Positions 26,501 to 29,500 of a stretch of DNA of 64,000 bases are shown piece after piece; position 1 is the stretch's first letter; each line of letters starts with the position of its first letter. The notes beneath the pieces were generated by a model. It saw only the letters and a program-made list of their open reading frames with translations, had not been told where the DNA came from and did not search any database. A program made the translations under genes and the position numbers. This DNA is from Bugula neritina (Eukaryota > Animalia > Bryozoa). The stretch is taken from the NCBI GenBank assembly GCA_964035545.1, contig OZ037767.1, positions 7,386,381 through 7,450,380 on the forward strand, in the 5' to 3' direction.

Positions 26501-29500
26501 TACTAGTTACTATTGAAGATAAACAACCCACCTGTGGCATGTAGTTGCTGGACTCTACTCTGCCACCTTTTGGATAGATTCTACTCAGTTGCTTCTTGTT
26601 GTAACTAAACACCTCAGCTAAGGAAACTGCCTTATATTTCAGCTTTCAACACATTACATAAACATACATTAACATAAAAGCGATAAACCCCATCGGAAAA
26701 GTTTAAACACCACTAGTTGAAAAAGAAAGTGCAAAAAGCGAAATGGTGACAACGAATAAAACGTTGAAATATTTAATCGAAGCACCAATACAAAAGAAGC
26801 CATGTTTTAAATAACACACTGGTTTTACGATGTAAACATGCTCGGTAGTTCAAACGAAAGAAATTAAACTGAAAACTCGTATCTAACCAGGTTTTATTAC
26901 ACCTCAAAATACATTAATTGGGTAAAAACTAAGACTAAGGTTTCTGGTTGTGCTTCTAGTACTATTACAGTGAATAGGATACTCAATGAGATCTAGAGGC
27001 TGGGTTTTAATAAGGTTGAGACAGTACGACTCACTAAATGAGCATTGATGAAAGTGTAGATTCAGTTCTACAAAAACATGACAACTAAAGTAAGGCTGAC
27101 CACTGGATCATACCAAACCAAAAGATTTACAGCAACCTCTATCTAAGCAGGAACGTCTAATAAAACAGCAAGCTGTTGGAAGAAAGGAAAAGCAGAGGAG
27201 CTGCAGCACAGAGGTCAAAGGTCTAAAAGCGTTAATAAAGGTCAAACTTATAGCAGGTAGATACTAGTAAAGCAAAGTTGAGGCAGAGGTTGGTACGGAA
27301 AGTGCAAGAGAGAACAATTCCGTTTGCGAAAATTAAACAAAACATAACTACTTTCAAACTAGGAATAAACATTTGACTGCTAGTGAATTCTAATTTAAAT
27401 ATAACAAATTTTCGTTGTAACATCTTGTTTTATTGACAAGATTCATTTTCATCAGGATATGACACGTGCACTTTACTCAGGATATGACACGTGCACATTA
27501 TTTAGAGTGACACGTGCACTAAGTAGCATCAAGGATACTTAACAAACTCTATTGCGTGAGACTTGATCAGGCCTAAGCCGGTGTTCTCGTTAAATGAAGA
27601 CATGTTATGCATGACGCCTCTCTCTGAAAGTATAGATAAGATTTTACTACAAGGAATAGCCATACTACAATTATTTAACTCATCAGAAAATCAGGCAAAT
27701 GCTAGGACTGCCCGAAGCTGGTATTGACTCCAAGTCTTATTATTCAGCCGATTACACTGCAATGCTGAGTAATTTACTGATGAGTTGAATAAAGAGAGAG
27801 CCCTAAAGGCATGGTTTAGTGAAGCAAACAATAGTATGTAATGGAGTATATAGCAATACAAAGGTCCTAAACTAATGTTCTCCATCTTGTTAGTATATAG
27901 TAGAGGGATGTTTCTTCTTATATATGCACATGTATGTAAAAACAGTACTGATAAAATAGAATACTGAGTGTGTGTTAGACATTTCATACAAGATTCATTT
28001 GAATAAACTGGACAAAAACAATGTAATGTGCAATGTCAATACAATAAACAATGTGACGACAATCTCTTTCTGTCAATTAGTGGTGAGAATAAAACCATAA
28101 AATTTAGAGCAAAATTTAACTGCAGTATTGACAAATTATTGACTTAAATTTTCGTATTTGAAATTAAATATATAAATGGAGTTTGATTTGTTAGTAAAAC
28201 ACCAATTAGGAAGAGTAAAACCTGAACAACGTAGCAGTTATGGAAACCTAGGAAATAGAATCTCGGAATGTATAAACGAGGAACTAAAATCAGCTACAAG
28301 AAAGTAGCAAATTATAGACCAAGAAGAAATCAAAATTGAAGTACTATAGTTAGCAGTATGTATCTCTTGGTCAACACAGGGACAGAATATTTTGCAAAAT
28401 GTAGGCCTATGAGTGAGATTCACATGTAGCACTATTTAAATACTCTGATATATGAACACAAATTTTAATGGAAAGTAAATTGATATCAAATAAAGATGGA
28501 ATAAATTATTACATACCATTATTCTAGACAACACATGTAGAGACACGAAATAACTAACTTTCTGCAATGGAGAATCCTTGAAACTTGACGGGTTGTATGT
28601 AGTTGATGAGAGACGATAGGTAGGGGTGTATGTTGGTAGTAGCGGACTCATATCTGTAGTTAGAGATCAGTTGGGATTCGTCTTCCGTAGTTAAACTATC
28701 CTGAAATAAAGAGATCAAATAATAATTTGCTTTTCAGAAGAGTGGAGTTGTGTCGACTTGATTAGAGTGATAAAGTGGCAAAATTATTATCTACCAGCTC
28801 TACAAAATAATTCCTATAAAATTATAAGTTACACTGCTATTAGGGAAATATGCCATCATTCATATAAACTCAGGTATTTGATTTCCTTTACGAACTACTG
28901 CTGGACCAATTATTGCAACAATAGCTTCACATTCCGTCATGTTGGTAATAGTAGTGCTGTACCAGTTCCCTAAGCAATGGCCAGTGAGCATTAATATCAG
29001 CAAAACTACAACACCCTGTATTGGTGTTGCAATAATCCGTATTGCCATTATGATTAGCAATACGTGAAATAAAAAAACCAGCTATGAACACACAACTAAT
29101 TGTGGTTGTTTCAGCACTGCTAAAGGCATACTTGCATGACGGAACTAAGACCAGCGTGGGGACTGATTCGTGTGCTGTCTACAGGAAACCACTTGAGTTA
29201 CTTACCGTTTTACCAACTAACTTTAAGTTGATTTTATCTTCCTTGTCCGCATCGTGTTTCTCTTTCATTTGGAGAAACTGTGACTCTGAGGCTATGAGGT
29301 CTACGATGGAGGATGTGTCCTTCTCCTCGGGGTGGGCCAAATCTTCTGAAGAGGCCGAGGTTAAGTTCACGTTATCCTCTGGAAACATAAAGATGAAGTA
29401 GAAACCATATACCAGGCTATCACTATGACTAACACAATATTTTTCCTGTCATCATTAGCAACAACTTAGCCAAAGAAATGGTAAAACCTTTACTTGTGTC

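What the first reader, a model, noticed from the sequence alone, without database searches (positions are those of the whole stretch)
26532..28700. Mutually exclusive PLC-beta active-site exons apparently locked by U2/U12 spliceosome incompatibility
Seen: two paralogous 85-nt exons (A 27539-27623, [29 protein letters not shown]; B 26983-27067, [29 protein letters not shown]) with identical phases. Both have pyrimidine-rich U2-type acceptors matching the upstream U2 donor (GTTAGT at 28558). Both end in U12-type donors (GTATCCTT, GTATCCTA). The only U12-like branch site I found (TTTCCTTAGC, no pyrimidine tract) precedes the downstream exon 26532-26604. The A-to-B intron would be a U12-donor/U2-acceptor hybrid, and so would the skip-both intron in reverse; including both or neither also shifts the frame. 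Established: this incompatibility logic is described for the vertebrate JNK alternative exons, and the S-F-x-E serine corresponds to PLC-delta1 Ser522, which contacts the inositol phosphate. From memory, Drosophila norpA also has alternative exon subtypes; I cannot confirm here that the position is homologous. Inference: a minor-spliceosome-gated switch between two catalytic-barrel variants of a PLCB4/norpA enzyme, possibly tissue-specific (e.g. photoreceptor vs other).
Basis: partly seen in the sequence, partly recalled or inferred. Interest (0 to 1): 0.9.

Follow-up and report, generated by a model that had tools for sequence, protein, structure and literature searches.

The report
Ancient either-or exons in PLC-beta4
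A calcium-signalling enzyme gene carries two alternative copies of one exon that apparently cannot be joined to each other because their splice signals belong to different splicing machines, and the same arrangement is kept in molluscs, annelids and ribbon worms, although in the papers searched it was described only for a few vertebrate genes.

Summary
Exons A and B (85 nt, same phases) of a PLCB4/norpA-type gene both end in U12-type donors. A U12-type branch site precedes only the downstream exon, and the genome has U11, U12, U4atac and U6atac. The same layout (A then B, both U12 donors, one branch site) is in four other genomes: an unnamed close relative, an annelid, a nemertean and a limpet. 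A-only and B-only isoforms are on record in gastropods, bivalves, cephalopods and an annelid. No B was found in vertebrates, insects, crustaceans or a horsehair worm. Best reading: a lophotrochozoan-wide mutually exclusive pair kept exclusive by U2/U12 incompatibility, as in vertebrate JNK, with frameshift and decay as backup. Corrections: both isoforms need the minor spliceosome, so it enforces exclusivity rather than choosing; the Ser522-equivalent is the same in both, and the differences lie mainly in the segment after it; the insect norpA pair is a different exon. Gaps: four RNA data sets of this species show only A junctions; incompatibility and tissue specificity are untested.

The parts
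17640..42531 (-). PLCB4/norpA-type phospholipase C-beta gene (approximate span, PH domain to C-terminal coiled coil)
   Evidence: tblastn of full-length homologues, exon by exon
29206..29378 (-). X-Y linker exon upstream of U
   Evidence: RNA joints in 4 runs; sequence
28559..28700 (-). Constitutive upstream exon U (142 nt), U2-type donor GTTAGT at 28558
27624..28558 (-). U2-type intron U to A (935 nt)
   Evidence: joint in all 4 RNA runs
27797..27811 (-). 15-nt intronic word, single copy in the genome, also present in the A-B intron of relative L016; unexplained
27539..27623 (-). Exon A (85 nt), ancestral-type copy
   Evidence: spliced in all 4 RNA runs; 81% aa identical to L016 A
27531..27538 (-). 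U12-type donor of A (GTATCCTT)
   Evidence: GTATCC at this position in 5 of 5 two-exon loci
27068..27538 (-). Hybrid intron A to B (471 nt): U12-type donor, acceptor without conserved U12 branch core
   Evidence: no A>B joint
27090..27096 (-). GCCTTAC, a possible weak U12 branch-like site before B; not conserved
   Evidence: duplex -10.0 kcal/mol with this genome's U12, top 1% of background; absent in 4 other loci
26983..27067 (-). Exon B (85 nt), derived copy
   Evidence: open frame; 56% aa identical to L016 B; codon-position pattern of coding constraint; no junction seen in this species
26975..26982 (-). U12-type donor of B (GTATCCTA)
   Evidence: GTATCCT at this position in 5 of 5 loci
26617..26626 (-). 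U12-type branch site TTTCCTTAGC
   Evidence: CCTTRAC at the same place in the 4 other loci and TTTCCTTAAT in mouse Plcb4
26532..26604 (-). Constitutive downstream exon D (73 nt) with the SRIYP motif

Best explanation
The exon encoding the start of the Y half of the PLC-beta4 catalytic barrel lay between a U2 intron and an old U12 intron. It was duplicated in tandem, probably once, in or before the common ancestor of molluscs, annelids, nemerteans and this animal (probably a bryozoan). Each copy kept a U2-type acceptor and a U12-type donor. The major spliceosome joins U to either A or B, and the minor spliceosome joins that exon to D. A-to-B needs a U12-donor/U2-acceptor intron and skipping both needs the reverse hybrid, so both are disfavoured, and any leak is out of frame and should be degraded. 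The choice is most likely made by competition between the two U2 acceptors. The proteins share the phosphate-binding serine and differ mainly in the segment after it, so the effect is more likely on regulation than on catalytic chemistry. Shown: architecture, conservation in five genomes, A splicing here, A-only and B-only isoforms elsewhere. Inferred: incompatibility as the cause, acceptor competition, single origin, B use in this species, functional effect.
For: Donors beginning GTATCC follow 10 of 10 alternative exons in five genomes; the CCTTRAC/CCTTAGC core precedes D in 5 of 5 and A or B in 0 of 10. All four minor snRNAs are present. RNA joints U>A and A>D in 4 studies, with no A>B or skip joint. 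A-only and B-only isoforms in abalones, limpets, Aplysia, Biomphalaria, clams, scallops, oyster, octopus, squid-type transcript assemblies and Owenia. B copies share a signature and form one side of a branch in the best tree. The mechanism is described for JNK, where the acceptor's pyrimidine tract decides the default exon (PMC1874599).
Against: No B junction in four RNA data sets of this species (contigs drop rare forms). Exons of 85 nt also make double inclusion and skipping out of frame, so decay alone could hide mis-splicing. Some hybrid-class introns are spliced (PMC11347168). The window's B acceptor has a U12-pairing GCCTTAC. Tree support for one B clade is weak (57/68, 27 columns), and window B scores about equally against A and B profiles (21.7 vs 22.7 bits). 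The nemertean A donor is a weaker GTATCCAA.
Confidence: 0.8

Rival explanations
1. The pair is real and ancient, but exclusivity comes mainly from frameshift plus nonsense-mediated decay (or from RNA structure or regulators); the hybrid intron is spliced at a useful rate and the U12 donors are simply inherited.
For: A+B and skip-both carry early stops; frameshift is by far the commonest feature of human clusters, 60% versus 0.79% for U2/U12 (PMC5740500); a U12-pairing heptamer sits before B in this genome.
Against: Both donors stayed U12-type in five genomes while no conserved U12 branch core appeared before A or B; no shared complementary docking elements between the introns in the three loci scanned; the introns are 367-4502 nt, too long for steric blocking.
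Confidence: 0.12
2. The pair is functional in molluscs and annelids, but B is silent or decaying in this lineage.
For: No B junction in four RNA runs; window B has the longest end branch in the tree and changes at otherwise near-fixed positions.
Against: Open frame, exact length and both splice sites are kept in this genome and in L016, whose introns cannot be aligned to the window's; identity at codon positions 1/2/3 is 0.63/0.70/0.41; only one difference is listed inside B between the genome and the RNA samples versus about 6.5 expected from the flanks (P about 0.01, but the table was truncated).
Confidence: 0.06
3. The duplication arose several times independently in different lophotrochozoan phyla, because any duplicate of this exon is exclusive from birth.
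For: Weak support for one B clade; some single-exon outgroup copies (priapulid, horsehair worm) score as well on the B profile as on A.
Against: Same order (A first) in 5 of 5 genomes; shared B residues across four phyla (hydrophobic in place of Tyr18; Cys23 in molluscs and L016; Asp25); label needs one change on the best tree, 0 of 500 shuffles as low. This rival concerns origin only and is compatible with the mechanism.
Confidence: 0.15

Closest known systems
Vertebrate JNK (MAPK8/9/10) exons 6a/6b
   Same: Tandem duplicate exons, each with a U2 acceptor and a U12 donor, a hybrid intron between them, GT-AG U12 intron on the 3' side (PMC1874599, PMC3584512, PMC5740500 appendix S18).
   Different: Unrelated gene, independent origin, invertebrate, shared across several phyla; no long pyrimidine tract before B here; tissue specificity and regulators unknown.
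MAPK14, CEP170 and CRTC1 clusters
   Same: Listed as U2/U12-incompatible exon clusters in human (PMC5740500).
   Different: Their U12 site is on the 5' side; the CEP170 and CRTC1 pairs are not found outside human according to that paper.
Insect and crustacean norpA alternative exons
   Same: Same gene family, equal-length alternative exons.
   Different: The insect/decapod pair is at residues about 124-149; decapods and an amphipod have another pair at the exon just upstream (U); all arthropod isoforms seen carry one A-type version of this exon.
Vertebrate PLCB4
   Same: A-type exon and a U12-type branch site before the same downstream exon in mouse (oligo sequence in PMC9066496); read-through models ending IEFVKYP imply the same donor.
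   Different: Only one version of the exon among shark and frog isoform sets.
Drosophila prospero and Urp twintrons
   Same: Invertebrate alternative splicing involving both spliceosomes (PMC3584512).
   Different: There the two spliceosomes compete for nested introns; here every isoform uses both.

Membership tests
U2/U12-incompatible mutually exclusive exons (JNK type) | Two homologous tandem exons of the same phase | tested here: met
   85 nt each, same phases, 43% nucleotide identity over the codons
U2/U12-incompatible mutually exclusive exons (JNK type) | U12-type donor on both exons | tested here: met
   GTATCC at 10 of 10 exons in five genomes, GTATCCT at 9 of 10; consensus match, not an intronIC score
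U2/U12-incompatible mutually exclusive exons (JNK type) | U12 branch site only before the downstream constitutive exon; U2-type upstream donor and acceptors | tested here: met
   Core before D 5 of 5, before A or B 0 of 10; upstream donors are not GTATCC. Caveat: non-conserved GCCTTAC before window B
U2/U12-incompatible mutually exclusive exons (JNK type) | Minor spliceosome present | tested here: met
   U12, U11, U6atac, U4atac over Rfam cut-offs
U2/U12-incompatible mutually exclusive exons (JNK type) | Both exons used, one per transcript | tested here: inconclusive
   Met in molluscs and an annelid (one automated snail model strings both together); in this species only A joints seen
U2/U12-incompatible mutually exclusive exons (JNK type) | Hybrid intron cannot be spliced | not testable with these tools
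   Needs minigene, decay block or lariat data
PLC-beta4/norpA subfamily | PH, EF, X, Y, C2 and C-terminal coiled coil with PLCB4-type Y-domain motifs | tested here: met
   Exon-wise matches along the whole length; subfamily motifs in exons U and D; a second PLC-beta gene lies elsewhere in the genome. No full-length tree was built
norpA subtype I/II alternative exon | Alternative exon at the homologous position | tested here: not met
   Insect and decapod pairs differ at residues about 124-149; Drosophila itself was not retrieved (130-155 from memory)

The most novel reading that the evidence does not exclude
A Cambrian-age, cell-type-specific switch: lophotrochozoans swap the Y-domain segment that aligns with the PLC-beta2 stretch once mapped as a G-beta-gamma site, giving one PLC-beta4 gene two regulatory modes (for example egg or photoreceptor versus general), and the paired layout has locked the U12 intron against conversion or loss, which happened in several single-exon lineages.
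Probability: 0.25. Interest if true: 0.85.

Novelty: new member of a known kind. Interest (0 to 1): 0.66.

Why it matters
U2/U12 incompatibility is a textbook route to mutually exclusive splicing, yet the papers I could search list only vertebrate MAP kinases and two human-only candidates (5 of 629 human clusters). This is an independent invertebrate case, shared by four phyla and so older than 500 million years if it arose once (age from general knowledge). It sits in the PLC-beta4/norpA enzyme and is testable in octopus, Aplysia, Biomphalaria, oyster or Owenia with existing RNA data. It also offers a natural test of why U12 introns persist: the intron is U12-type in all five two-exon genomes, but converted or lost in the horsehair worm, amphipod, nematode-like and rotifer-like copies and in this genome's other PLC-beta (mouse keeps it with one exon, so the pair is not required). 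The isoforms already sit in databases as unnamed X1/X2 models; I found no paper describing them, but the library lacks most subscription journals.

Tried and rejected
PDB searches with the 27-residue exons found nothing useful. Two structure predictions gave pLDDT under 50 over the Y domain and were not used. A flatworm contig ended before the exon, and its two GTATCCTT matches are chance, so flatworms are untested. The priapulid copy retrieved is intronless. The metagenome scan returned L016/L017 again, intronless rotifer-like copies, one nematode-like copy and an unidentified single A-type exon on short contigs. A scan for complementary docking elements found nothing shared between loci. Steric blocking rejected (introns 367 nt or longer). 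Pairing energies of donors to U11 did not discriminate and were not used. No second copy of any other exon in this gene. Literature searches found no report of this pair; the original norpA and G-beta-gamma papers were not held. The spliced model was searched exon by exon by reference; the joined-model search was left out, and joined frames were checked only inside a script.

Full report
Observation. On the minus strand, exon U (28700-28559) ends in GTTAGT. Exons A (27623-27539) and B (27067-26983) are both 85 nt with the same phases and end in GTATCCTT and GTATCCTA. TTTCCTTAGC lies 12 nt before exon D (26604-26532). With A or with B the frame is open; with both or neither it stops early. The gene is a complete PLCB4/norpA-type PLC-beta spanning about 42531-17640, and no other exon is duplicated. 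The genome (216 Mb) has U12, U11, U6atac and U4atac. An earlier unchecked note of this scan names the host as the bryozoan Bugula neritina.

RNA of this species. Contigs from four studies all show U>A and A>D, and none shows A>B, skipping or any B joint. B is covered only by unspliced contigs in three runs. Those samples differ from the genome by about 8% in introns, yet only one difference is listed inside B, against about 6.5 expected (P about 0.01; the table is truncated, so this is indicative). Contigs drop rare forms, so B use here is neither shown nor excluded.

Conservation. Four other genomes have the same layout in the same order: L016, an unnamed close relative from a JGI metagenome, the annelid Owenia, the nemertean Tubulanus and the limpet Patella. 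All ten alternative exons are 85 nt and are followed by GTATCC (nine by GTATCCT). The branch core CCTTRAC or CCTTAGC precedes D in five of five and precedes A or B in none of ten. Protein clusters hold A-only and B-only isoforms for abalones, limpets, Aplysia, Biomphalaria, clams, scallops (where B is five residues longer), oyster, octopus and Owenia. Full-length B-type reading frames on 4-kb Logan contigs of cephalopods must come from spliced RNA, and a Chaetopterus PLC-beta entry is B-type. One automated snail model strings both exons together; no other record does. A is slow-evolving (78% mean identity) and resembles the single exon of other animals; B is faster (49%) with shared residues. 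B rows form one side of a branch in the best tree, with weak support (57/68).

Outgroups. Shark, frog, insect and decapod isoform sets contain only an A-type exon. In the horsehair worm the exon is single and the intron has a non-U12 donor; in an amphipod and in nematode-like and rotifer-like contigs the intron is gone, as it is in this genome's other PLC-beta. Mouse Plcb4 has TTTCCTTAAT before the same exon start (oligo in PMC9066496), so the U12 intron predates the duplication. Flatworms, brachiopods, invertebrate deuterostomes and cnidarians are untested.

Mechanism. This is the JNK layout (PMC1874599, PMC3584512). Each productive route uses one U2 and one U12 intron; both unproductive routes need a hybrid. 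So the minor spliceosome does not choose between A and B; it makes the choice exclusive. In JNK2 the choice depends on the acceptor's pyrimidine tract, and I infer the same kind of competition here. Frameshift and decay back it up and cannot be separated from incompatibility without experiments. One caveat: the window's B acceptor has a GCCTTAC that pairs strongly with U12, though without a bulged A, 22 nt from the acceptor and not conserved. Steric blocking is excluded by intron length, and no shared docking structure was found.

Protein effect. The serine of S-F-x-E lies 27 residues before the arginine of SRIYP, the spacing of Ser522 and Arg549 in PLC-delta1, which bind the substrate's 4- and 5-phosphates (PMC12195575). 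That serine and the glutamate are invariant in all A and B copies; the differences cluster in the residues that follow. By alignment the exon matches PLC-beta2 residues about 563-591, including E574-L575-K576. A helix in the Y subdomain was mapped as a G-beta-gamma site by peptide work, but binding there appears to clash with membrane engagement and cryo-EM places G-beta-gamma on the PH and EF-hand domains (PMC12871268); that the peptide was this exact stretch is from memory. A regulatory difference is therefore a lead, not a result. Structure predictions failed in this region.

Comparison with norpA.

Novelty. A human survey found five U2/U12-incompatible clusters among 629: MAP kinases, CEP170 and CRTC1 (PMC5740500). 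Searches found no report of a PLC-beta case or an invertebrate case of this layout, within a library that lacks most subscription journals. I class it as a new member of a known kind, notable for its independent origin, its spread over four phyla and its position in the catalytic barrel. The joined spliced model was not sent to any search tool; exons were searched singly by reference.

Noticed in passing
window 27797-27811 (-) and L016 11055-11069: An identical 15-nt intronic word lies before A in the window but between A and B in the relative (E 0.007); single copy in this genome, absent from the three other phyla. Possibly a relic of the duplication, a regulatory element, or chance.
   Followed up: partly
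window 27606-28364 and 26808-27481: Unspliced RNA contigs cover the introns around A and B in three runs while neighbouring introns are largely uncovered; fits slow splicing or retention in the cluster, but filtered contigs cannot prove it.
   Followed up: no
L024 21755-23829 and decapod isoforms: Crustacean norpA has its own alternative pair at the exon just upstream (U), while the U12 intron is lost in the amphipod.
   Followed up: partly
window 29671-31591: A 29-bp satellite (66 copies, 95% matches) fills most of an intron in the X-Y linker region.
   Followed up: no
window 29488-29562 (-): One RNA run shows a minor joint from 29488 to the linker exon at 29378, suggesting a cryptic or alternative upstream exon.
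   Followed up: no
window 12571-13575 (-): Single-exon rhodopsin-family GPCR (334 aa) with only six unnamed homologues at E below 1e-20.
   Followed up: partly
window 52818-53162 (+): Open frame with a WSC domain.
   Followed up: no
L020: The Priapulus PLCB4-like gene retrieved is intronless over 1188 codons.
   Followed up: no
L023 33877-34368: A mononegavirus-like fragment is called inside an intron of the horsehair worm gene; observed only.
   Followed up: no
scallop isoforms P0331, P0334: Scallop exon B is five residues longer than A, the only length change seen in the pair.
   Followed up: no
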